Of a stretch of DNA of 64,000 nucleotides, positions 3,799 to 19,909 are shown piece by piece (position 1 is the stretch's first letter; each line of letters opens with the position of its first letter). The translations under genes and the position numbers were made by a program. The notes below the pieces were generated by a model that was given only the letters and a program-made list of their open reading frames with translations, had not been told where the DNA came from and ran no database searches. The stretch is from sequence record PQ464595.1. One strand, written 5' to 3'.

Positions 3799-3817
3799 AA
3801 TAACTTTTCCAAATAAG

Positions 3818-3839
3818 AAAAGGGAACCGAAGTTCCCTT
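3818..3839 (-). terminator. Intrinsic terminator with C(UUCG)G loop after the clamp gene
   Basis: Minus strand AAGGGAAC-TTCG-GTTCCCTT-TT. Confidence 0.8.
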
Positions 3840-3847
3840 AGATAAGA

Positions 3848-4579
3848 TTAGCAACCACTTACGTAGATGCTGTAAACAGCAATACCAGTATCAACAGTTA
3901 CGTTCATCATACCAGTTTTGGTGAATCCCATTGTCTTAGATTCAGCACTGGATACGCGGTTCAGTGCTTGGAATACACGGTCAATTGGATAACCATAACC
4001 TTTAGTTAGTTCACCTTCAGTTTTAGAGAACTGAATTGTACCTGTATGGTTGTTTTTATTCTTTTCACCAACGTAGAAATGTAAGCTGTCATCCTCAGTG
4101 TAGGGAGTGACTAAAGCAGAGAAAGATTTAAACACGCCTGAGAAGCTTTTTAGTTCATTGACCTTAGCAGCACTAGGTGTAACCTGTACGTCAAATGGTT
4201 GGTCAGTGAATCGTGGTTGGTTCGGAATATATTTTTCCGCAACTACTAGATAGTTGGTATTTGCTTCGTCGGAATTGAAAGTTAGGCTTTTAACTACGCC
4301 ATCTTTCTCATTCACGCCGATTTTAGTACTTTCAGTCTTATAGACGTTTAGGTTCAATAGACCTTGAAGCATTCCAAGATTACCAATACCGAAACGACCT
4401 ACAACTTCAGGTACGTCTTCTTTAGTATATGCTCGCATAACTAAATTTTTGTCAGAAGTATAAGCTTCCATATAAACACGTTGGCCTTCGCCACGATCTT
4501 CGCTTGAAATAGCGATACAATCAAAGTCAATTCCAGCGGTGGTGTTTACCAGGTCGCGTAGTACGTCACGTAATTCCAT
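3848..4579 (-). CDS. gp45: DNA polymerase sliding clamp (gp45-like)
   Basis: 243 aa, two-domain alpha/beta pattern (FGIGNLGMLQGLL; RVFQALNRV..MTFTK.GMMNVTVD), close to the polymerase gene. Confidence 0.7.
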   Translation of the reverse strand: MELRDVLRDLVNTTAGIDFDCIAISSEDRGEGQRVYMEAYTSDKNLVMRAYTKEDVPEVVGRFGIGNLGMLQGLLNLNVYKTESTKIGVNEKDGVVKSLTFNSDEANTNYLVVAEKYIPNQPRFTDQPFDVQVTPSAAKVNELKSFSGVFKSFSALVTPYTEDDSLHFYVGEKNKNNHTGTIQFSKTEGELTKGYGYPIDRVFQALNRVSSAESKTMGFTKTGMMNVTVDTGIAVYSIYVSGC

Positions 4580-4609
4580 TTGTTAAATCTCCATGTTGTT
4601 AACGGGTAC

Positions 4610-4638
4610 ATTATACCAGATAATTTCTACCCGTTTCA
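4610..4638 (-). promoter_or_regulatory. Class A promoter upstream of the clamp gene
   Basis: TGAAAC GGGTAGAAATTATCTGG TATAAT. Confidence 0.8.
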
Positions 4639-4647
4639 TCTTTTTTT

Positions 4648-5145
4648 TTAAATGTTTCTTGCTGACTTAGTGTTTTGAGCAATTTCATTAAGAAGATTGG
4701 TCATAACTTCAGTATTATCAGCTTTTGGAAAGCTATAATCTTCAAGAATACTCAAAGGATTATACGCAGCATTCATTAATGAAGTCGTTTGTCCTTTATA
4801 TTGTAAATGTGAGGTATCACCAGTACCAGTACCGTAAGTATACAATGGTTTTGTTTGATTGTAATACCAAATACCCGGAGCTGGACGACCATTAGGGTAA
4901 GATTGTTCGTTATTGTAAGGCCAAGAATTTTCTTTCTTAGGAACTTCAACAATCTTGATTACTTCTTTAGTTTTTTGTTCGATCTTAAACAGGGCGACGA
5001 TTTTATCGCCCTCTTTGATAGATCCAACCTTTGTAAAACCAGCAGCAGTTAGTACATCTTCTTCATGTTTACTTTCAGCACGAATAATATCGTGCTTACC
5101 GTTAGAAAGAAGTGCTTCGCCAATGCGTTCATAAATGTTAGACAT
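4648..5145 (-). CDS. Hypothetical protein carrying a 20-aa portal-like segment near its C-terminus (probable start MSNIYE)
   Basis: SD AAGGA after the pol stop; TSLMNAAYNPLSILEDYSFP (4726-4785) vs portal TSLMDAAYNPLSILEDYFFP (16686-16745). Confidence 0.85.
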   Translation of the reverse strand: MSNIYERIGEALLSNGKHDIIRAESKHEEDVLTAAGFTKVGSIKEGDKIVALFKIEQKTKEVIKIVEVPKKENSWPYNNEQSYPNGRPAPGIWYYNQTKPLYTYGTGTGDTSHLQYKGQTTSLMNAAYNPLSILEDYSFPKADNTEVMTNLLNEIAQNTKSARNI

Positions 5146-5159
5146 ATTTTTATCCTTTA

Positions 5160-8100
5160 TTACCAACCGAAGAAACCAGTGTTTAATTCGATTGAACTCT
5201 TTTCGTCTATAGCAATATCCATATCCAGAATACCGAAGATATTACCCAATTTCTTTGTCAGTACTGCCAATTCCATAGCATCATCATCGAACGGAAGTTC
5301 TAGATACCACTCTGGCAAGTAATCTACACAGTCAATTGGATAACCAATCTTCTTAATACCTAATGGATTCGGTTTTAGGTCACAAACAATTACTTTAGTA
5401 CCGTCTGTTGCTTCTGGAACTGATTTATCATCGTTCAAATCACGAAGTTTGTTCCATTGAATAGCGGCTAGTACGTGTCCTACCTTACATTTACCTGTAT
5501 CCTTGTATTCTTTCTCTTTATTGGTATAGTTTTTCACTGTTTTTGGTGAACCTTTCTCAATACTTGGCTTGTCTTTGAACTCTTTCTTGAACGCACGTAC
5601 ACGAGTACGTAGTTCTTCTTCAGATTCACCCACCAGTAACGCAACTAGAGTCTCTTCTAGGAAGTTCTGGATGTATTTTGGAGTATCTGAACGTTTAATT
5701 TCAAGACCCATAGCTTTGATTTTACCAGGTTTACCATCCACATCTAAACGGAATCCATCTTCCCAATATTTTAGAATAGCATAACGCTTCTTCTTCAAGA
5801 ATAAACCACGAGAACCAACCATTTCTAAGTCAGCACCAACGATTTTACCCTTTTCAATACCAGTATTAAAGGTTTCGTCCATAAATTCAGGGAATGATGC
5901 ACCTACTGTGTCACCAATCATTTGATAAAGTTCTACAACTTCATCTTTAGACATTTCAAATGGAATGTCGTTCTCTTTATAGTAGTGTGCTACGCTGAAA
6001 TACACGGAATCCGTGTCACCATATACAACTACACCACCATTATGATCGTATGTTTCAGTACATACTTCATTAATCTTACTCGCCATGTGCTTAGTCATGC
6101 TACGACCAGTTAATGTAACTGATTGACCTAGACGTTTGTCGAAGAAACGAGAACCTTTGTTCAACAACGCACCATATAGTGAGTTCAGAAGAATCTTACG
6201 AATCTGTTGGTTCTGTTTCCAGAACGCAGATTGCGTTTTACAGTACTTCTTATCTGAATCGAGTACGAATACACGACCATTCTCAAGACGCATACCATTA
6301 TCGGCAATAATCTTAGCAAGTTCAGCATAATTCTTGTCAGCCAGAGCTAAACGCATCAGATATACCGGATCACCTTCGTGTAGGTTCGTTTTATGGATAC
6401 CAGTACCGAATTGTAGTGATTTTAGTAGTTCTTCGAGTTCTTGTAAAGCCACTTCCGGCATTTCCCATCCATCTGATGCCAAATGTTTGTAGTCAATGAC
6501 CATTTTCTGTTGTGCTTTACGTTCTGAGTACCATACTGTAAGAATTTCTGGAATAACACCATACTTAGTCTTATCAAATAGAGTACCGTTCGCACTTAGT
6601 ACGATAGTACTGTCTTCTGCGAAGATAATATCATACAATTCCGCACCTGTTGCTTGGAAGCTTGTACCATCTTCAAGATCTACAGTAATGATTTCGTCAG
6701 ATTTCTCACGAACCATTGTAAATTCAATACTTGCGAACAAACCATGCCATGCTTCAGTATATTTCGGTTCAAAACGACCTTTTCCACGATAACGTAGACG
6801 TTGTTCCTCAATACGTGCTGCTAGATAAGCTTCAGTATAAGTTTGACGTAGCTGACCGAGAATACATTCAGTACTCATGCCTAAAGCACGTAGAACTGTT
6901 GGATATAGTGAGTTAAAGTCAGTACAACCCAACCAATCAATCAATCCTAGTACTGGATCTTGTACCCAAGCACCCGCAGCTTTAGAACCCTTCGGTGGTT
7001 CATCTTCATCATCTTCATCGTCATCATAATCCATTTCGTAGTCTTGATACTCGAAATCTGGTTCATCATCTTCAAGTTTACGCTTGTTGAATACTACTTC
7101 ACCACGTTGGTGAGCCAGGTTGATGATTGCGGTATCAATTAGTGCTACTGAACCCATTGTAGTACTGATAAGTACACATTCTTTGTGTGCTAGGCGGTTA
7201 TGTAGGTTAATGAAGTCCATTTTATCGTCGATTTTCTTCAACAAGATACTATCTTGCTTAGAATAACGCAAGAATGTCATGTAATCTTCACGATATAACT
7301 TATCCAAAGACCCTTCATAGGATACTTTGTTCTCGCCAGTGACTTTTTCAGCAATATAATCTAGTTTATATGACTGTTCTACTTGTCCAGCATGTTTCTT
7401 ATAAAGAGCTAGATAGTCTAGGTGAACACGTCCTACTAAATCATAGGTTACAATGGTTTTACCGAACATATCTGCTTCACGAGCGTTAGGTTTCTTGTTC
7501 CATAAGCACCAACGAGCAAGAGTAGCTTCATTAAAGAGCTTTCTTGTACGGTTTACCATGTATGGAATATCAAAGAATTCGCTGTTCCAGCCAGATAGAA
7601 TATCGCCGTCTTCAATTAGCTCAAAGAACGTTTCAAACATCTCTGTTTCTTCGGTATAGAGGATTACGACGCTATCAGGGTCGTTTGTTTCCGCGTTTAG
7701 GCGGTTAATAATGTCCTGAGCTTCATGAATTTCCATGTCAGTAGGAGCCATTGTAAGAACATAGTCCTTACCTGTCCAGCTTTGATACAAAGAAATTGCT
7801 GTAACTCGGTTAAATGGATCACTCGGCTGAGCATATCCGAATTTAGGGTGAAAGTCTGTTTCAATATCGAAGAATGCGATATTAAGGTCAGGAGACGACT
7901 TACCCATGTAATGTTTCGCAAGGGTTTTAAATGTTACATTACAATCTGCCTCATAAATCTTAGCAGAAACTGGTAATGTTTCCATTTGTTTTTTCATATC
8001 TGAATAGCGAGAGAACTCAAACTTCTCGGCAAAAGTACCGTTGATAGTTTTATGTTCACCACGTGGAGATTCTACATAGTACTCGTAAACTGGTTCGATT

Positions 8101-8189
8101 TCTCGTAGAACACGACGACCGTTTACACGTTCAGCAACATGTAGTACTTCTCCAGTACGCTTTCTATCCATATATCCATCTATATACAT
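5160..8189 (-). CDS. gp43: B-family DNA polymerase (gp43-like)
   Basis: ExoI DIETD, DFNSLYP, KILLNSLYG, YGDTDS, KKRY; uninterrupted ORF. Confidence 0.97.
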   Translation of the reverse strand: MYIDGYMDRKRTGEVLHVAERVNGRRVLREIEPVYEYYVESPRGEHKTINGTFAEKFEFSRYSDMKKQMETLPVSAKIYEADCNVTFKTLAKHYMGKSSPDLNIAFFDIETDFHPKFGYAQPSDPFNRVTAISLYQSWTGKDYVLTMAPTDMEIHEAQDIINRLNAETNDPDSVVILYTEETEMFETFFELIEDGDILSGWNSEFFDIPYMVNRTRKLFNEATLARWCLWNKKPNAREADMFGKTIVTYDLVGRVHLDYLALYKKHAGQVEQSYKLDYIAEKVTGENKVSYEGSLDKLYREDYMTFLRYSKQDSILLKKIDDKMDFINLHNRLAHKECVLISTTMGSVALIDTAIINLAHQRGEVVFNKRKLEDDEPDFEYQDYEMDYDDDEDDEDEPPKGSKAAGAWVQDPVLGLIDWLGCTDFNSLYPTVLRALGMSTECILGQLRQTYTEAYLAARIEEQRLRYRGKGRFEPKYTEAWHGLFASIEFTMVREKSDEIITVDLEDGTSFQATGAELYDIIFAEDSTIVLSANGTLFDKTKYGVIPEILTVWYSERKAQQKMVIDYKHLASDGWEMPEVALQELEELLKSLQFGTGIHKTNLHEGDPVYLMRLALADKNYAELAKIIADNGMRLENGRVFVLDSDKKYCKTQSAFWKQNQQIRKILLNSLYGALLNKGSRFFDKRLGQSVTLTGRSMTKHMASKINEVCTETYDHNGGVVVYGDTDSVYFSVAHYYKENDIPFEMSKDEVVELYQMIGDTVGASFPEFMDETFNTGIEKGKIVGADLEMVGSRGLFLKKKRYAILKYWEDGFRLDVDGKPGKIKAMGLEIKRSDTPKYIQNFLEETLVALLVGESEEELRTRVRAFKKEFKDKPSIEKGSPKTVKNYTNKEKEYKDTGKCKVGHVLAAIQWNKLRDLNDDKSVPEATDGTKVIVCDLKPNPLGIKKIGYPIDCVDYLPEWYLELPFDDDAMELAVLTKKLGNIFGILDMDIAIDEKSSIELNTGFFGW

Positions 8190-8220
8190 CTTATCTCCTT
8201 ATAATTACGTACTTAAAACT

Positions 8221-8248: not shown

Positions 8249-8554
8249 TTACTCGTCTTCGTCTTCCATTGAAGCCAAGTTACCGGAAACGGTAAGAATG
8301 GTTTCAACTTCGTCCTGATCGCGAACTTTATCGAAGAAGTCTTGCTTGTAGATACGCATCGCAGCAGATTTCAGTTTAGATTTGTCTAAACCAAGTTCAT
8401 CTGCTAGAGTATCCATGAAGTCGCCATATGATTCTTTAAGAGTATCAAGGTGGGTCAACTGTACTACCGCAGAATTCAAGCCATCTTTAAGTTTTTTACG
8501 TTGTACGTCATTCAACTCATGTGCTTCAATTTTAGATTCTGTCTTCTTAGCCAT
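8249..8554 (-). CDS. dsbA: DsbA/GapR-like dsDNA-binding protein
   Basis: ELGLDKSKLKSAAMRIYKQDF...DEVETIL resembles T4 DsbA ELGVDGKMFNRLLALYHKD (from recall); 101 aa. Confidence 0.6.
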   Translation of the reverse strand: MAKKTESKIEAHELNDVQRKKLKDGLNSAVVQLTHLDTLKESYGDFMDTLADELGLDKSKLKSAAMRIYKQDFFDKVRDQDEVETILTVSGNLASMEDEDE

Positions 8555-8574: not shown

Positions 8575-8606
8575 AAAAAAAGCATCCTAACTCTCCGCTA
8601 GGATGC
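8575..8606 (-). terminator. Intrinsic terminator of the tail-fibre unit
   Basis: Minus strand GCATCCTA-GCGGAGAGT-TAGGATGC-TTTTTTT. Confidence 0.75.
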
Positions 8607-8610
8607 CTAC

Positions 8611-8639
8611 ATTATAGCACAGGAATTTTACCCGTTTCA
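8611..8639 (-). promoter_or_regulatory. Class A promoter for dsbA-pol operon
   Basis: TGAAAC GGGTAAAATTCCTGTGC TATAAT. Confidence 0.8.
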
Positions 8640-10701: not shown

Positions 10702-11013
10702 TTATTCCTGAGCTTCATCAAGATCATCCTTAACTCCATCTATCATATTAGCTGCGAGTTTCTTAGACATTTTATACCACTCTTTACCAGTACCTTGAGT
10801 TGCGTTCATATGCTTTAAACGTTTATTAACTTCTTTTTCCGCAGCTTTAGCATCTTCAAATTGTACTTCATGATAAACTTCATAATCTCTGAACGGAGAA
10901 CCAGTCTGGTACGTACTTAATCTGGTCTTCATTTCTTCTTTTGATGTAAATCCAATCTTAACCCATTCAGGCCATGCTTGATTCACTATTACGTAACAGA
11001 TTTGATTTGCCAT
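10702..11013 (-). CDS. T5orf172-domain (GIY-YIG superfamily) protein
   Basis: YVIVN...WVKIGFT...RL..YQTGSPF.DYEV......AEK..HK-type pattern. Confidence 0.8.
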   Translation of the reverse strand: MANQICYVIVNQAWPEWVKIGFTSKEEMKTRLSTYQTGSPFRDYEVYHEVQFEDAKAAEKEVNKRLKHMNATQGTGKEWYKMSKKLAANMIDGVKDDLDEAQE

Positions 11014-11486: not shown

Positions 11487-11515
11487 ATTATAGCACAAAG
11501 TGTGCTCTCGTTTCA
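11487..11515 (-). promoter_or_regulatory. Class A promoter
   Basis: TGAAAC GAGAGCACACTTTGTGC TATAAT. Confidence 0.8.
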
Positions 11516-15986: not shown

Positions 15987-17723
15987 TTAAAATGAATTGC
16001 CTAAACTATTTGGGTCAAATCCACCATCTGCTTGAGAATCTTGATATTCAGAATCAGCACTGTCTAAGTTACCTTCATCATCAATACCTAGATCTTGTTC
16101 AGGATCATTTGGTGATTCAATACCAACTGATTGTAATCCTGCCGAAGCACCTGGAACATCTGGACCACCAGCAGCAGCAGCTTCAGGGTTTTCTTGTAAC
16201 CATAGCTTTTCATTCTCAACAATATCATCTTGCTCAAAGCCCATCTTTTTCATAATGAACTGTTTAGAGAAGTACTTGAGATCATTCAACGGCATATATG
16301 TTTGAATCAACTTAGCATCCATTTCAGCTTTACGGTTCGCCGCAAAGTTCATTGGTGGATTAAAAGTGACTTCAAAGGAAGATGCACTAATGTTATATCC
16401 ATTTTTAAGCATATAACGTTTGAATTCTTCATCAAAAGTTCTAGAAACAATACGTTGATAACGCATACATTCATTGTTAAAACGTAATTCACTAGCCATT
16501 GCTTGTGTAGCACCATCACCGAACAAAGCAACACCACCATCATCTGGACCCATAGGTAGATATGAAGCTGGAATTTGTAGACCACGAATCAATTTGTTAT
16601 TGAAGTATCGTAAGTCATCAATTTGTCCTAAATTATCACCACCCGGTAAAGTTTCTACTGAAGAACCACGCCCTTCCGCTGTCTGAGGGAAGAAATAGTC
16701 TTCAAGAATACTTAGTGGATTATATGCTGCATCCATCAATGAAGTACTACCACCCTTATTAGATGGAATACGACGCTGGTGAATATCGTTTTTAACTCTT
16801 TCAACAAATGCCATTGCCTGATGCGGTTGCATGTCACCTACGTCAATTTTAAAGACGCGGCGTTCAGGAGCACGTTGAACACGATAGATAATAATACTAT
16901 CTTCTAGAAGTTCTTTTTGTTTGTATACTTTGAAAATGTTTTCAAGAATACTAGTACCGAAAGGCCAGAAAGGATCTTGCCCGGTATTTAGTGATAAGTG
17001 AATAACGTGTTCTGCCGCTACAGGAAGAACATCTAACTGCCCACCAGTACCGAATTGTCCTGAACTATCAGAACCAGAACCACCAGCACTACCTAGAGAA
17101 CCGTAGTTATTACCAGAACTCGCTAAAGAGTTAGGCATCGTTCCTGGATAAGCTTGTTTATCAAAGCCAATTTGTAAATTACTCATTACTTTATCATGTA
17201 AGTTCAAATGAACATCACGCATAAAGTAAACAATAGGTGTTTTACCAGTTGCATTGTTTACCAGTACTTTATCAACGTTCATTGGATTTACCCAATACCA
17301 AACGAAGGTTTCTGGATCACGAATGAAGAACTGATCACCGTATTTTAGAATTCCACGAATAATATCGTAGATTCTCATTTTAAATTCGTTTAAATCAGAC
17401 CATGATTCAAGACGATCTTCTAAAGTCGTAACTTCAGTGTCGCCCATCGTGTCTTTATACTGAATTTGGAATGGTAGACCGAAATCTTTAGTACTTTGAG
17501 TACAGAAATCCGCAATAATGTTTAAAGCGGTTCGAATTTCAGGGTCTTGATCCATTTGATCGTATTGACGATAACGGTCAACACGATTTGATAGGCCAGT
17601 ATAGACAGCAGGTAGATAAGAAGAAAAATTCGTCTTAGAACCACCTGGCTGAGCCATAGCATTTTGTTGAGGAACGGTCGATAATTTAGAACGTCCTAGT
17701 GTCATATGTCGTTGCCAACTCAT
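15987..17723 (-). CDS. gp20: Portal protein (gp20-like)
   Basis: LLEDSIIIYRVQRAPERRVF.IDVG.M, EDYFFP, VETLPGG, YFNNKL.RGL.IP. Confidence 0.97.
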   Translation of the reverse strand: MSWQRHMTLGRSKLSTVPQQNAMAQPGGSKTNFSSYLPAVYTGLSNRVDRYRQYDQMDQDPEIRTALNIIADFCTQSTKDFGLPFQIQYKDTMGDTEVTTLEDRLESWSDLNEFKMRIYDIIRGILKYGDQFFIRDPETFVWYWVNPMNVDKVLVNNATGKTPIVYFMRDVHLNLHDKVMSNLQIGFDKQAYPGTMPNSLASSGNNYGSLGSAGGSGSDSSGQFGTGGQLDVLPVAAEHVIHLSLNTGQDPFWPFGTSILENIFKVYKQKELLEDSIIIYRVQRAPERRVFKIDVGDMQPHQAMAFVERVKNDIHQRRIPSNKGGSTSLMDAAYNPLSILEDYFFPQTAEGRGSSVETLPGGDNLGQIDDLRYFNNKLIRGLQIPASYLPMGPDDGGVALFGDGATQAMASELRFNNECMRYQRIVSRTFDEEFKRYMLKNGYNISASSFEVTFNPPMNFAANRKAEMDAKLIQTYMPLNDLKYFSKQFIMKKMGFEQDDIVENEKLWLQENPEAAAAGGPDVPGASAGLQSVGIESPNDPEQDLGIDDEGNLDSADSEYQDSQADGGFDPNSLGNSF

Positions 17724-17740
17724 ATTTTATATAACTCCAT

Positions 17741-19909
17741 TTATACATTTCGAGGTGGTTCAGTGTTCTCTGCAATCTGTCTTAATATAAGAGCAGTTTG
17801 GCTCGCATTTTGATTCTGAGCTTGTATACTATTTAGTATCTCTCCTAAGACCTTACTTGGGTCATCTTTACTAGTTGAAGCGGTTTGTTGCTCATTAACT
17901 GGTGTAGATTGATCTGCTTGTTCGACCTTAACGGGTTTAGTCATTTCAGTTTTTGCGGTTACAGTCTGATTACCTGAATTTGAAGGCTGTGATGCTGCTG
18001 GATTAGCAGGCTTTGAAGTACTTGCGGTTTTTGCTGGTTCAGCAACAGGTTTCTTTTCATCATCCCCATTCCACCAACTCTTAAACTTATTCAAGTATTC
18101 ATTTAGTTTATCATTTAATGAATTATACATATCCATAAATGATCTTTTCGTTTCTTCTTGCCCTGGTGGTGTAGTTTTTCCAATATCAGAGAATGCACCC
18201 TTAATACCATCCCAAACTGATGACGCTGCGTCCTTTATTCCATTAAGTTTGTCTTCAAGACTACTGTTCCACCATCCAGTAATGGAATCCCATAACATAG
18301 TTGGCAAGTTTAGTAGATTATTCATGAAATCTTCAAACGCTTTGGATACTTGAGTATAACTATCACCAAATAAACTGGTAGCCCAACCTTCTAGAAGATT
18401 TTGAAGATACAACATACCATCATTGAATATGTCTGGAATAGCTTTTAATCCATCACGGATTAGTTTAGCTGTGAAATCCCAAGCATTATCACTGTTATCT
18501 GCTAGATTAGTTAAGTAAGAAGCAGCAGATTCTGCCATTTCAGCATAGAAACGGCTAAATGGTTCAGTGAATGTAACACCAATCCAGTTATTGAATCGTT
18601 GAGTCATGTTTTCAAATAATGGTGTTGGATTATTTTTTGGATCATTCAATAATGCTTCTTGTGTCTTTAATTGTTTCAACCAAGCAGCCGCCGCAGTATT
18701 ATTCATTAAGGTTTGATTACCAATTTCCATGTCTAACATGTCTTGGTGCTCTTTAACCCACTGTGTCATTGCTCGACGTGCTTGCTTTTCATCAGTAACA
18801 CCAGCAGCTTGTAGTTGCTGTAACTGATTAGTATACAATTGAGTAAAGTTGTTATTGTATTCATCAGGTAACATATTTTGGAAGTTCTTACTGGACATTA
18901 ATTTCTGTAATGTCTCACCAGATTTACCCATACTCGCATATACGGAGTTAAATGTTTTGTTTACTTGAGCAGCTTTATCGTCACTAAAACCGAATCGTTG
19001 CTTCAATGCTTGTTCTGTTACTTCTGAATCAACTGTGTCTGACATGCTATCAAATGATTTTAATAGTTCGTCAACACTCTTACCTACAGTTTTACTTAGA
19101 TAGGTCATAGTACCGACAAATTTTTCAGTACTTTGAGATTCAGACATACTACGTAAACTTTGTTCACCAGCATACATCTTTTCAAATTTATAGTTCTTTG
19201 CGGTTAAATCTGTTAATTGCTGTTGAGATACACCATAAAGACCCATTTTGTCTTGAGCAAGTTGAACGGTATTTAGTAATTTACCAAAGTGTTCAACACC
19301 ATCGCCATATTGACCTTCCATCGCAGCCAATTCAGTACTGTTACGTTTAACTGCTGCACTGAAATCATTGATACTTAAGAAAGCTGAACCAGCACCTTTA
19401 CGAACGGTTAACATACCATCAGTTAGTGTAAGTCCTGCGGAGTTTAGTTCATTGTACATATTTAACTGTTCATTCATGTACTCATAAACCTGTCCAGCAA
19501 CTTGTACTACTTGTAAGAATGAAGAAGCAACCAGACCTATCGGGCCTGGTAGTTTACCTAATGAATTTTGAAGTACTTTAGCTCCAGCAGTAAATGAACC
19601 TACAGTATTCTGGATAGATCCACTGTTACCTAACATGGTTCTACCAATATTTTGTGCCTCGCCGAATAAATCTTTAAACGCATTCTTGAACGCTGAACCT
19701 GATCCACCAGAACCAGAACCACCGCGACCACCAGATCCATTATCTGAATCATTGTTGCCGCCACCTGAACCGCCTGAACCAGAACCTTTATTAGTGTTCT
19801 TCTTAATATCAAGCAGTACTGTACGCATCGCACTTAAATTATCATTCATAGCTACGCTTTGATCCAACAATTGCTGTTGGATATAGTCGTTGTTGCCAAT
19901 GCCCGCCAT
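17741..19909 (-). CDS. Tape measure / baseplate hub protein (gp29-like, putative)
   Basis: Long helical protein with periodic Trp in the C-terminal half; located between portal and hub genes. Confidence 0.6.
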   Translation of the reverse strand: MAGIGNNDYIQQQLLDQSVAMNDNLSAMRTVLLDIKKNTNKGSGSGGSGGGNNDSDNGSGGRGGSGSGGSGSAFKNAFKDLFGEAQNIGRTMLGNSGSIQNTVGSFTAGAKVLQNSLGKLPGPIGLVASSFLQVVQVAGQVYEYMNEQLNMYNELNSAGLTLTDGMLTVRKGAGSAFLSINDFSAAVKRNSTELAAMEGQYGDGVEHFGKLLNTVQLAQDKMGLYGVSQQQLTDLTAKNYKFEKMYAGEQSLRSMSESQSTEKFVGTMTYLSKTVGKSVDELLKSFDSMSDTVDSEVTEQALKQRFGFSDDKAAQVNKTFNSVYASMGKSGETLQKLMSSKNFQNMLPDEYNNNFTQLYTNQLQQLQAAGVTDEKQARRAMTQWVKEHQDMLDMEIGNQTLMNNTAAAAWLKQLKTQEALLNDPKNNPTPLFENMTQRFNNWIGVTFTEPFSRFYAEMAESAASYLTNLADNSDNAWDFTAKLIRDGLKAIPDIFNDGMLYLQNLLEGWATSLFGDSYTQVSKAFEDFMNNLLNLPTMLWDSITGWWNSSLEDKLNGIKDAASSVWDGIKGAFSDIGKTTPPGQEETKRSFMDMYNSLNDKLNEYLNKFKSWWNGDDEKKPVAEPAKTASTSKPANPAASQPSNSGNQTVTAKTEMTKPVKVEQADQSTPVNEQQTASTSKDDPSKVLGEILNSIQAQNQNASQTALILRQIAENTEPPRNV

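What the first reader, a model, noticed from the sequence alone, without database searches (positions are those of the whole stretch)
4726..4785. A replication-operon gene carries a selected 20-aa copy of the phage's own portal clip segment (possible decoy/mimic)
Seen: ORF 4648..5145 encodes TSLMNAAYNPLSILEDYSFP and the portal (16686-16745) encodes TSLMDAAYNPLSILEDYFFP, 18/20 identical. The two DNA copies differ at 12 of 60 nt: 9 synonymous changes in 8 codons and only 2 amino-acid changes. That pattern suggests the peptide is conserved, rather than a recent DNA duplication. Flanking sequence is unrelated. Knowledge: this segment sits between RAPxRR and TLPG and aligns with the T4 gp20 clip region, the exposed surface used by terminase and neck proteins; STAND-family Avs4 sensors are triggered by portal. 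Inference: the gene is co-transcribed with pol from a class A promoter, so it is made before the portal. It could act as an anti-defence decoy, or as a timing inhibitor of packaging or neck assembly.
Basis: partly seen in the sequence, partly recalled or inferred. Interest (0 to 1): 0.88.

Follow-up and report, generated by a model that had tools for sequence, protein, structure and literature searches.

The report
Small phage protein copying portal motifs
A small non-structural protein of a giant Erwinia phage carries selected short copies of two of the phage's own head-vertex proteins (the portal clip and the tail of the neighbouring virion protein), which suggests a built-in competitor or decoy, although its function has not been tested.

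Summary

The window is Erwinia phage Kaldavass, a Rak2/GAP32-like jumbo phage. The 165-aa ORF lies just downstream of DNA polymerase in all relatives examined. It has a folded N-domain and a C-terminal half predicted to be disordered.

- **Selection:** Where the clip-like segment (B) is retained, it is the best-conserved part of the protein. It is under purifying selection (P=3.7e-6), and synonymous sites are near saturation.
- **Permuted copy in relatives:** In the Munch-like clade the copy is longer and circularly permuted (B then A, whereas the portal has A then B).
- **Second copy (new):** The Kaldavass ORF's C-terminal tail copies the C-terminus of the 722-aa virion protein encoded next to the portal (hhalign 96.5%; 0/300 shuffles reach its score).
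- **Dispensable and exchangeable:** B is missing in many relatives. A genome about 95–99% identical in the flanks has a swapped C-terminal cassette (47% identity over B).
- **T4 mapping:** B corresponds to the loop after helix α6 plus the first strand of the inter-subunit clip sheet. It does not include the terminase-contact tip.

The decoy or competitor function is plausible, because portal clips are known docking sites for immune sensors, but it is untested.

The parts
4648..5145 (-). Small ORF, 165 aa (phrog_25089, function unknown), directly downstream of DNA polymerase
   Evidence: Orthologues lie at the same position in 8 relatives. Shine-Dalgarno AAGGA lies 8 nt before the ATG.
4972..5145 (-). 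N-terminal folded domain, aa 1-58 (alpha-beta-alpha-beta-beta); the conserved core of the family
   Evidence: AF2 pLDDT 70-84. Invariant R7 G9 S14 G16 F37 G41. Only 12 clusters among 1.84 billion proteins, always at the N-terminus of short proteins. N-domain-only versions exist in RaK2 and phage UB.
4786..4971 (-). Linker rich in Y/P/G/N/T, aa 59-120, including the conserved YTYGTGTGD motif; predicted disordered
   Evidence: pLDDT <50; composition; alignment A2.
4726..4785 (-). Segment B copy, aa 121-140: 18/20 identical to portal aa 327-346
   Evidence: It is the most conserved stretch in the 18 B-retaining homologues (0.86, computed on aa 120-139). Purifying selection P=3.7e-6.
4651..4725 (-). 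C-terminal tail, aa 141-165: a copy of the C-terminal tail of the 722-aa virion protein
   Evidence: hhalign 96.5%, E=8e-10, both aligned to their C-termini. 0/300 column shuffles reach the score. HMM E=0.0026 against all window ORFs.
15987..17723 (-). Portal protein, 578 aa, T4 gp20-like
   Evidence: Pfam PF07230 E=6e-115; PDB 3ja7/6uzc E=1e-25.
16623..16871 (-). Clip domain of the portal (about aa 285-367), mapped from T4 gp20 residues 279-358
   Evidence: alignment together with the domain limits given in PMC4493910.
16686..16745 (-). Portal segment B, aa 327-346 (loop after helix alpha6 plus the first strand of the clip hairpin); the source of the ORF copy
   Evidence: Invariant in 9 phages.
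16770..16862 (-). Portal segment A, aa 288-318 (clip strand, terminase-contact tip, helix alpha6). It is copied after B in Munch-type relatives but not in this window's ORF.
17741..19909 (-). 722-aa virion structural protein encoded immediately upstream of the portal (phrog_14121)
   Evidence: Its CBB homologue CBB_251 was found in the virion by mass spectrometry (29 peptides, 50% coverage).
17744..17818 (-). C-terminal tail of the 722-aa protein, aa 698-722 (ends ..LRQIAENTEPPRNV); the source or counterpart of the ORF tail
   Evidence: Conserved in 9 phages.
19793..19846 (-). A related motif near the N-terminus of the 722-aa protein, aa 22-39
   Evidence: weak; BLASTP E=0.19.
5160..8189 (-). 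Family B DNA polymerase, 1009 aa; in the same transcription unit as the ORF
8249..8554 (-). 101-aa gene at the head of the unit (weak match to a PHROG transcriptional-regulator family)
8611..8639 (-). TGAAACG-type promoter-like site upstream of the 101-aa gene / pol / ORF unit
   Evidence: 0.04 expected by chance. The class is described in PMC5259590. Conserved in XbC2.
4610..4638 (-). TGAAACG-type promoter-like site just after the ORF stop; it starts the next unit
   Evidence: Conserved in XbC2, GAP32 and CBB.
17738..17745 (-). T4-late-like motif (7 of 8 positions) just upstream of the portal ATG, overlapping the stop codon of the 722-aa gene
   Evidence: The motif class is described in PMC5259590. 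Exact copies lie before other head genes.

Best explanation
SHOWN:
- The ORF belongs to a small protein family confined to Rak2-like jumbo phages and always encoded just after DNA polymerase.
- It has a folded about 58-aa N-domain, which is the conserved core, followed by a long C-terminal half predicted to be disordered.
- That half carries short copies of late head-vertex proteins. In Kaldavass there are two: 20-25 aa of the portal clip (segment B), and about 25 aa matching the C-terminal tail of the 722-aa virion protein encoded next to the portal.
- In the Munch-like clade the copy is a longer, circularly permuted clip: hairpin B joined to strand A plus helix alpha6.
- B was captured once, long ago, and is kept by purifying selection where present.
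- The whole C-terminal cassette is nevertheless dispensable and is exchanged between otherwise near-identical genomes.

INFERRED MECHANISM: The protein is made from a replication-class promoter, ahead of or independently of the late portal. It acts as a monovalent competitor, comparable to a microProtein, that presents portal-vertex motifs to a partner which normally recognises the real clip. The cassette is conditionally useful and the portal is invariant, so I think the partner is most likely a host factor. My first candidate is an immune sensor that docks on portal clips and is activated by clustering on the 12-mer ring. A single-copy mimic could occupy such a sensor without activating it.
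For: - Copy and selection.
- Family, architecture and disorder.
- Permuted clip in relatives: Pfam stretches in reversed order; BLAST; hhalign 94% with 0/150 shuffles reaching the score.
- Second motif.
- Cassette exchange: flanks 95-99% identical, B 47%. B+ and B- lineages are interleaved on the N-domain tree.
- Not listed among virion proteins in CBB, whereas the 722-aa homologue is.
- Promoter classes.
- The clip as a documented immune target: SpbK docks on the clip domains of the SPbeta portal ring and is activated by clustering, with an escape mutation in the clip helix; EcAvs4 contacts the stem, clip and wing of portal monomers (PMC12847820). RAZR assembles around portal rings (PMC13017515).
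Against: - There are no expression, binding or phenotype data.
- 20 aa in a disordered context is small compared with known sensor interfaces. Avs4 reads a fold across stem, clip and wing, and SpbK contacts the clip helix, which the Kaldavass copy lacks.
- No portal sensor is known for hosts of these phages.
- The gene sits in a conserved replication/morphogenesis block, not in the early accessory region where anti-defence genes usually cluster (PMC5259590).
- The conserved part of the family is the N-domain, whose function is unknown and may be unrelated to the portal.
- AF2 gives no confident structure for the C-terminal half, although the alignments are shallow (22-27 sequences).
Confidence: 0.35

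Rival explanations
1. Internal timing regulator. The clip mimic competes with the real portal for the phage's own clip-binding partners (large terminase, or the gp13-like neck adaptor). This would keep them from acting prematurely until portal-containing proheads accumulate.
For: In T4 the clip is the docking site for gp17 and gp13 (PMC4493910). The C-terminal arm of gp13 inserts between alpha6 helices and contacts a clip strand, and gp20 N323, which lies inside the B-equivalent, contacts gp14 in a mis-assembled complex (PMC12929587). Munch-type proteins carry the strand, tip and alpha6 that hold the terminase-contact positions. The ORF lies in a block that mixes replication and morphogenesis genes, including TerL and a GroES-like gene.
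Against: The Kaldavass-type copy lacks the terminase-contact tip. The portal is invariant and its partners are conserved, yet B is lost or swapped in close relatives with the same portal. That is hard to reconcile with a needed assembly control.
Confidence: 0.2
2. Portal-binding cap or chaperone. Segment B is the first strand of the inter-subunit clip sheet. A free copy could pair with the complementary strand of an unassembled portal subunit. That would hold monomers back or shield them, functionally like T4's portal-assembly chaperone gp40.
For: [quoted passage not shown] B in the ORF lies in a region predicted to be disordered, as expected for a strand that folds on binding. T4 portal assembly needs a dedicated phage chaperone (figure legend).
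Against: No family search returned gp40 or any named chaperone. Munch-type proteins contain all three strands, so they would be self-satisfied rather than capping. The dispensability argument above also applies.
Confidence: 0.12
3. Historical capture without mimicry. The pieces were acquired by illegitimate recombination from the adjacent 722-aa and portal genes. They are now kept because they serve the ORF's own fold or an N-domain-related function, not because they resemble the portal.
For: The conserved core is the N-domain. The two source genes are adjacent, so one capture region could supply both pieces. Many lineages do without B.
Against: B stays 85-95% identical to an invariant portal segment although synonymous sites are near saturation. 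It is more conserved than the N-domain itself (0.86 versus 0.63). Two different source proteins are copied. The order in the ORF (B then tail) does not match the genomic order.
Confidence: 0.15
4. Recent duplication, ongoing gene conversion, chance similarity or an assembly artefact.
For: None beyond the similarity itself.
Against: E=8e-10 in the window. The arrangement is present in independent isolates and metagenomes. pS is 0.63-1.0 between the ORF and its own portal, no lower than against foreign portals. ORF-specific shared states (TT before S; N to D in three lineages) indicate one old capture.
Confidence: 0.01

Closest known systems
T4 gp20 portal clip domain (PF07230; PDB 3JA7, 6UZC)
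   Same: Segment B aligns to gp20 318-337 within the clip (279-358). Munch-type relatives also carry the clip strand and helix alpha6.
   Different: The ORF is not a portal. It has only 20-25 aa of portal sequence (up to about 65 aa in relatives). The pieces are in permuted order, attached to an unrelated N-domain, and predicted to be disordered on their own.
MicroProteins / dominant-negative fragments (small proteins derived from the interaction module of a larger protein; recalled from general knowledge)
   Same: It is small, it is derived from the interaction surface of a larger oligomeric protein, and it lacks the rest of that protein.
   Different: Competitive binding has not been shown. 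The concept is described mainly in eukaryotes. Here two different source proteins are sampled, and the module is exchangeable.
Phage anti-defence proteins that compete with a structural-protein trigger, e.g. DSAD1 against DSR2, which senses the tail tube (PMC11087589, listed)
   Same: The idea is the same: a phage protein occupies a sensor of a conserved structural protein.
   Different: From the abstract, DSAD1 is described as a separate phage protein and nothing there says it copies the trigger. Here the candidate is a literal copy of the phage's own structural motifs. No sensor has been identified.
SpbK-YonE and Avs4-portal recognition (PMC12847820)
   Same: These show that portal clips are docking platforms for host immune proteins. 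They also show that activation can depend on clustering on the 12-mer ring.
   Different: Those are Bacillus SPbeta and T7-like portals. The contact is mainly with the clip helix or a large fold surface. No phage-encoded clip mimic is described there.
T4 gp40 (portal assembly chaperone; named only)
   Same: It is a small phage protein acting on portal assembly, and by my recollection it is encoded among replication genes.
   Different: No family or structure search returned it for this ORF, so no relationship can be claimed.

Membership tests
T4-like portal protein (Pfam PF07230) | A match to the portal profile above the gathering score, over the wing-stem-clip-crown core | tested here: not met
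   The Kaldavass ORF has no Pfam family at E<=0.01. P0023 reaches 30.4 bits (cut-off 22.9), but only as two short stretches (the best maps to profile 202-234), placed after the B stretch, that is, in reversed order.
T4-like portal protein (Pfam PF07230) | Collinear order of the clip elements (strand A, helix alpha6, hairpin B) | tested here: not met
   The order is B then A in Munch-type, Hallingskeid, P0026, P0034, P0141 and P0144. The Kaldavass ORF has only B.
Intein / Hint domain (bacterial intein-like) | An all-beta Hint fold with a conserved N-terminal nucleophile and a C-terminal Asn before a +1 Ser/Thr/Cys | tested here: not met
   The only lead was a PDB hit at E=0.58 (2lwy). The AF2 N-domain is alpha-beta-alpha-beta-beta. 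No Hint match appears in the fold search. No conserved nucleophile and no conserved residue before the TTS of segment B appear in the alignment.
MicroProtein-like competitor derived from a larger protein | A small protein whose only similarity to the parent is an interaction module | tested here: met
   The ORF is 165 aa. Its similarity is limited to clip segment B and to the tail of the 722-aa protein.
MicroProtein-like competitor derived from a larger protein | Binds the parent's partner and competes with the parent | not testable with these tools
Known anti-defence protein families | Sequence or fold match to a described anti-defence protein | tested here: inconclusive
   PHROGs gives 'unknown function'. 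Pfam and NCBIfam give nothing. The PDB and BFVD fold searches return only family members or noise. No dedicated anti-defence library was available.
Virion structural protein | Detected in purified virions | tested here: not met
   The CBB orthologue CBB_264 does not occur in the main text of PMC5259590, whose virion table lists CBB_251 and others. The CBB and BF GenBank records mark neighbours as structural but not this gene. This is indirect evidence and comes from relatives only.

The most novel reading that the evidence does not exclude
A phage strings short copies of its own conserved late structural proteins (the portal clip and the tail of the portal-neighbour virion protein) onto a disordered tether behind a small anchor domain, and expresses this protein ahead of the late genes. 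The protein would work as a monovalent 'self-epitope' decoy that blunts host immune sensors which recognise, or cluster on, those structural proteins. Different phage lineages would swap the cassette to match what their hosts sense.
Probability: 0.2. Interest if true: 0.9.

Novelty: new variant of a known kind. Interest (0 to 1): 0.66.

Why it matters
Portals and other core virion proteins are now known to trigger several bacterial immune systems. How phages protect such invariant proteins is an open question, because escape mutations in them are costly. Even if the partner turns out to be the phage's own terminase, neck or portal subunit, the family would be a clear natural case of a circularly permuted, domain-swapped interface turned into a small regulator. 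It would also point to which parts of the jumbo-phage portal vertex are functional contact sites. The finding supplies concrete, alignable alleles (B+, B to A, B-) for comparative work.

Tried and rejected
1. Co-variation of the ORF segment with each phage's own portal. This is uninformative, because portal segment B is invariant in all 9 phages.
2. Concerted evolution or recent gene conversion. Rejected: pS between the ORF and its own portal is 0.63-1.0, no lower than against foreign portals.
3. Intein/Hint origin, from a PDB hit at E=0.58. Rejected by the fold and the alignment.
4. The Kaldavass C-terminal helix as a remnant of clip helix alpha6. Rejected: hhalign against the portal gives 0.2%, and against the alpha6-containing region of B-to-A relatives 0.08%. 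It matches the tail of the 722-aa protein instead.
5. A source protein for the alternative 'ELYKLAT'-type tails of B-minus alleles. None was found in the 30-kb loci or by tblastn of all phage records. Whole genomes were not scanned sensitively.
6. Other small clip-copy families. The clip-only search returned portal fragments plus two more members of this same family.
7. Identity of the N-domain. There is no significant PDB fold match. BFVD returns only family members. The Hallingskeid orthologue has a weak hit to RNase_J_C, below threshold.
8. Identity of the 722-aa protein. Pfam, NCBIfam and PDB give only low-complexity noise.
9. AF2 of the monomers gave no confident structure for the C-terminal half.

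Full report
**Identity of the window.** Region 3800-8200 is 100% identical to Erwinia phage Kaldavass (PQ464595, 366.6 kb). Its closest relatives are XbC2 (93%), GAP32, CBB, BF, the pEa_SNUABM phages and fHe-Yen9-04. More distant relatives are the Munch/SE_PL and 121Q groups. All of these are Rak2-like jumbo myoviruses.

**Observation.**
- The ORF at 4648..5145 (- strand, 165 aa) carries TSLMNAAYNPLSILEDYSFP at aa 121-140.
- The T4 gp20-like portal (15987..17723, Pfam Portal_T4 E=6e-115) carries TSLMDAAYNPLSILEDYFFP at aa 327-346.
- There are 12 nt differences in 60: 9 synonymous changes in 8 codons, plus 2 amino-acid changes.
- In a tblastn of the clip region against the whole window, this is the only second hit (E=8e-10; the next has E=5).

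It is neither chance nor an artefact, because independent genomes show the same arrangement.

**The gene and its family.**
- Orthologues lie immediately downstream of the family B DNA polymerase in all eight relatives examined. Gene order is the same throughout: 722-aa virion protein, portal, small head genes, protease, scaffold, major capsid protein, tail fibre, chaperone, small gene, pol, this ORF, a 243-aa gene, phosphoesterase, GroES-like gene, and so on.
- A search of 5.8 billion proteins found 26 relatives.
- An exhaustive HMMER scan with the N-domain alone found only 12 clusters at 50% identity among 1.84 billion proteins. The domain is always at the N-terminus of a protein of 68-184 aa.
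- AlphaFold2 on two alignments gives a folded alpha-beta-alpha-beta-beta N-domain (aa 1-58, pLDDT 70-84). Confidence is low for aa 59-134, which includes the copied segment. A C-terminal helix follows.
- Fold searches return no known fold and only family members. Among these are N-domain-only versions in RaK2 and phage UB.

The N-domain is therefore the conserved core, and the C-terminal half is a variable appendage.

**Selection.**
- The useful comparison is between ORF orthologues. Three phylogenetically independent pairs give 24.3 synonymous and 21.7 non-synonymous differences over 20 codons. The synonymous fraction is 0.53, against 0.21 expected under neutrality (binomial P=3.7e-6). pS is 0.41-0.79 and pN is 0.08-0.26.
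- pS between each ORF and its own portal (0.63-1.0) is no lower than against foreign portals. There is therefore no recent gene conversion.
- ORF-specific shared states (TT before S; N to D in CBB, Munch and Hallingskeid) point to one old capture.
- Among the 18 homologues that retain B, it is the most conserved stretch of the protein: 0.86, against 0.63 for the N-domain and 0.41 for the linker.

**A longer, permuted copy in relatives.**
- In the Munch-like clade (P0020-P0025, P0141, Munch) the copy extends through the second hairpin strand. It is then joined directly to a stretch matching portal aa about 287-319: the clip strand, the tip and helix alpha6.
- P0026, P0034, P0144 and Hallingskeid have B joined to the same A stretch.
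- In the portal, A precedes B. In these ORFs, B precedes A.
- Pfam confirms this independently. In P0023, residues 139-171 match Portal_T4 profile positions 202-234. The preceding B stretch matches positions about 245-267 in clade members.
- hhalign of the post-B regions against the portal alignment gives 94% probability (E=1e-7). No column shuffle out of 150 reaches the score.
- The T4 structure paper states that the clip (gp20 279-358) has three strands and helix alpha6. Its sheet is inter-subunit: one strand comes from one subunit and two from the neighbour (PMC4493910).
- Inference: a B-to-A fusion would be a single-chain version of that domain-swapped unit. I could not test this structurally.

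**What B corresponds to.**
- Using the HMMER alignment to 3JA7/6UZC, Kaldavass B (327-346) equals T4 gp20 318-337. This is the loop after alpha6 plus the first hairpin strand.
- The T4 residues reported to touch terminase gp17 (N291, M292, R295, K296) map to Kaldavass 297-302. They lie in segment A, which the Kaldavass ORF lacks.
- The T4 neck paper reports the gp13 C-terminal arm inserting between alpha6 helices and contacting a clip strand. It also reports gp20 N323, inside the B-equivalent, contacting gp14 in a mis-assembled complex (PMC12929587).

**A second copied motif (new).**
- The extreme C-terminus of the Kaldavass ORF (..LLNEIAQNTKSARNI) resembles the extreme C-terminus of the 722-aa virion structural protein encoded immediately upstream of the portal (..ILRQIAENTEPPRNV). 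XbC2 and GAP32 reach 9/15 identity.
- An HMM of 16 ORF tails, run against all 836 stop-to-stop ORFs of the window, finds that protein as the best non-self hit (E=0.0026; the next has E>=0.5). The reverse HMM is weak (E=0.11).
- Profile-profile comparison gives 96.5% probability and E=8e-10 over 25 columns, aligned flush to both C-termini. No column shuffle out of 300 comes close (36.3, against 6.8 +/- 1.6 and a maximum of 12.5).
- The same tails show no similarity to the portal or to the alpha6 region of B-to-A relatives.
- The 722-aa protein also has a related stretch near its own N-terminus.
- Its CBB homologue is an abundant virion protein by mass spectrometry. The ORF's homologue is not listed.

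The Kaldavass ORF therefore samples two adjacent head-vertex genes.

**Dispensability and cassette exchange.**
- B is absent or replaced in P0007, P0008, P0011, P0013, P0015, P0017, P0019/BF and fHe-Yen9-04.
- 121Q-like phages keep only the N-domain.
- B+ and B- lineages are interleaved on an N-domain tree.
- Against a 371-kb metagenomic contig (L009), nucleotide identity varies sharply by region:

| Region | Window coordinates | Identity to L009 |
|---|---|---|
| DNA polymerase | 5160-8189 | 95.3% |
| ORF N-domain | 4972-5145 | 98.9% |
| ORF linker | 4789-4971 | 77.6% |
| ORF segment B | 4726-4785 | 46.7% |
| ORF tail | 4651-4725 | 60% |
| Next gene | 3848-4579 | 96.3% |

- The boundaries are sharp, near 4940 and 4650. 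This is a swapped module, not slow decay.
The segment is selected where present but is not essential.

**Transcription.**
- The pol stop and the ORF ATG are 14 nt apart, with an AAGGA Shine-Dalgarno sequence and no terminator between them.
- Sites of the form TGAAACG(N)TATAAT lie at 8639-8611, upstream of the 101-aa gene / pol / ORF unit, and at 4638-4610, just after the ORF. A third lies at 11515-11487. Only 0.04 are expected by chance. The sites flanking the ORF are conserved in XbC2, GAP32 and CBB.
- The CBB paper describes this divergent RpoD-like class, concentrated before DNA-synthesis genes including pol. It also describes a separate T4-late-like motif before structural genes (PMC5259590).
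- Exact late-like motifs precede head genes here, and a 7-of-8 version precedes the portal ATG.
- This supports different temporal classes by motif only. I found no expression data for this phage group.

**Mechanism.**
- Shown: a non-virion accessory protein carries selected, exchangeable copies of portal-vertex motifs on a tether predicted to be disordered.
- Inferred: it competes for a partner that reads those motifs.
- Literature makes a host partner plausible. SpbK docks on the clip domains of the assembled SPbeta portal and is activated by clustering, with an escape mutation in the clip helix. EcAvs4 contacts the stem, clip and wing of portal monomers (PMC12847820). RAZR rings assemble around portal rings (PMC13017515). 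A monovalent mimic could occupy a clustering-activated sensor without activating it.
- Conditional usefulness (cassette swapping while the portal stays invariant) favours a host-side partner over the phage's own conserved terminase, neck or portal. The latter remain serious rivals.
- Against the decoy reading: the copy is short; known sensor contacts centre on the clip helix or on large surfaces; no sensor is known for these hosts; and the gene lies in a core block rather than in the early accessory region.
- I put the host-factor competitor at about 0.35, an internal timing regulator at 0.20, a portal cap or chaperone at 0.12, capture without mimicry at 0.15, and artefact or chance at 0.01.

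**Comparison with known systems.**
- The ORF is not a portal: the profile test and the collinearity test both fail.
- It is not an intein: the fold and the catalytic residues are not met.
- It matches no named family in Pfam, PHROGs, NCBIfam, PDB or BFVD.
- T4 gp40, which I had in mind as a functional analogue, did not come back from any search, so no relationship is claimed.
- The closest concept is a microProtein-like competitor, or a trigger-competing anti-defence protein. A literal self-copy of structural motifs, from two source proteins and in permuted form, is to my knowledge undescribed. The literature searches found none.

- the T4 late-promoter octamer, before the CBB paper showed it;
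- a generic Hint-block pattern;
- the T4 prohead-protease cleavage consensus.

Noticed in passing
window 17744-17818 and 19793-19846 (- strand): The 722-aa virion protein next to the portal has similar short motifs near both of its ends (N-terminal ..MRTVLLDIKKNT.., C-terminal ..LILRQIAENT..). The C-terminal one is conserved to the last residue in nine phages. This suggests both ends dock on the same kind of site.
   Followed up: partly
window 17738-17745 (- strand): The last codons and the stop of the 722-aa gene overlap a T4-late-like promoter motif for the portal. Part of the conservation of that protein's final residues could therefore be a DNA-level constraint.
   Followed up: no
window 16800-16960 versus 16686-16760 (portal, - strand): Inside the portal, the stem-helix region before the clip (..TSILENIF..LLEDSIIIY..) weakly resembles segment B (..TSLMDAAY..ILEDYFFP..). 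BLAST aligns Munch-type ORFs to both registers (ORF 97-193 to portal 244-335, E=5e-10).
   Followed up: partly
window 4610-4638, 8611-8639, 11487-11515 (- strand): Three copies of a phage-specific promoter-like element (-35 TGAAACG, extended -10 TGnTATAAT). Two share an 11-base upstream block, TGAAACGGGTA. This is the class described for CBB and GAP32.
   Followed up: partly
window 8580-8608 (- strand): A strong terminator-like hairpin (12 pairs followed by a T run) lies immediately downstream of the 8639-8611 promoter-like site and before the 101-aa gene. This is an odd promoter-then-terminator order and might be an attenuator or a 5' leader structure.
   Followed up: no
P0026 (metagenomic homologue), aa about 105-142: The first half of segment B occurs twice in tandem (..DLMDVAYNPI.. 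then ..TLMDAAYNPLSILEDYFFPQ..). P0034 shows the same arrangement.
   Followed up: no
L001 21204-23544, L002 21200-23543, L003 21201-23544, L005 21169-23515: In several relatives the large terminase is annotated as two adjacent CDS (about 230 aa plus about 549 aa). They overlap in GAP32, CBB and BF, and are separated by a single base in XbC2.
   Followed up: no
L007 15001-15504 (Hallingskeid orthologue), aa 11-64: The N-domain gives a near-threshold Pfam hit to the RNase J C-terminal domain (E=5e-4, 21.5 bits against a cut-off of 23.8). This is the only hint about the N-domain's fold family.
   Followed up: no
L008 14859-15297 (phage 121Q): In 121Q-like phages the position after pol holds two short overlapping CDS (49 aa and 98 aa). 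The second is an N-domain-only version of the family with an unrelated C-terminus.
   Followed up: partly
window 10702-11013 (- strand): By synteny with GAP32_253 and CBB_259, this is a T5orf172-domain gene sitting between the capsid genes and the tail-fibre gene.
   Followed up: no
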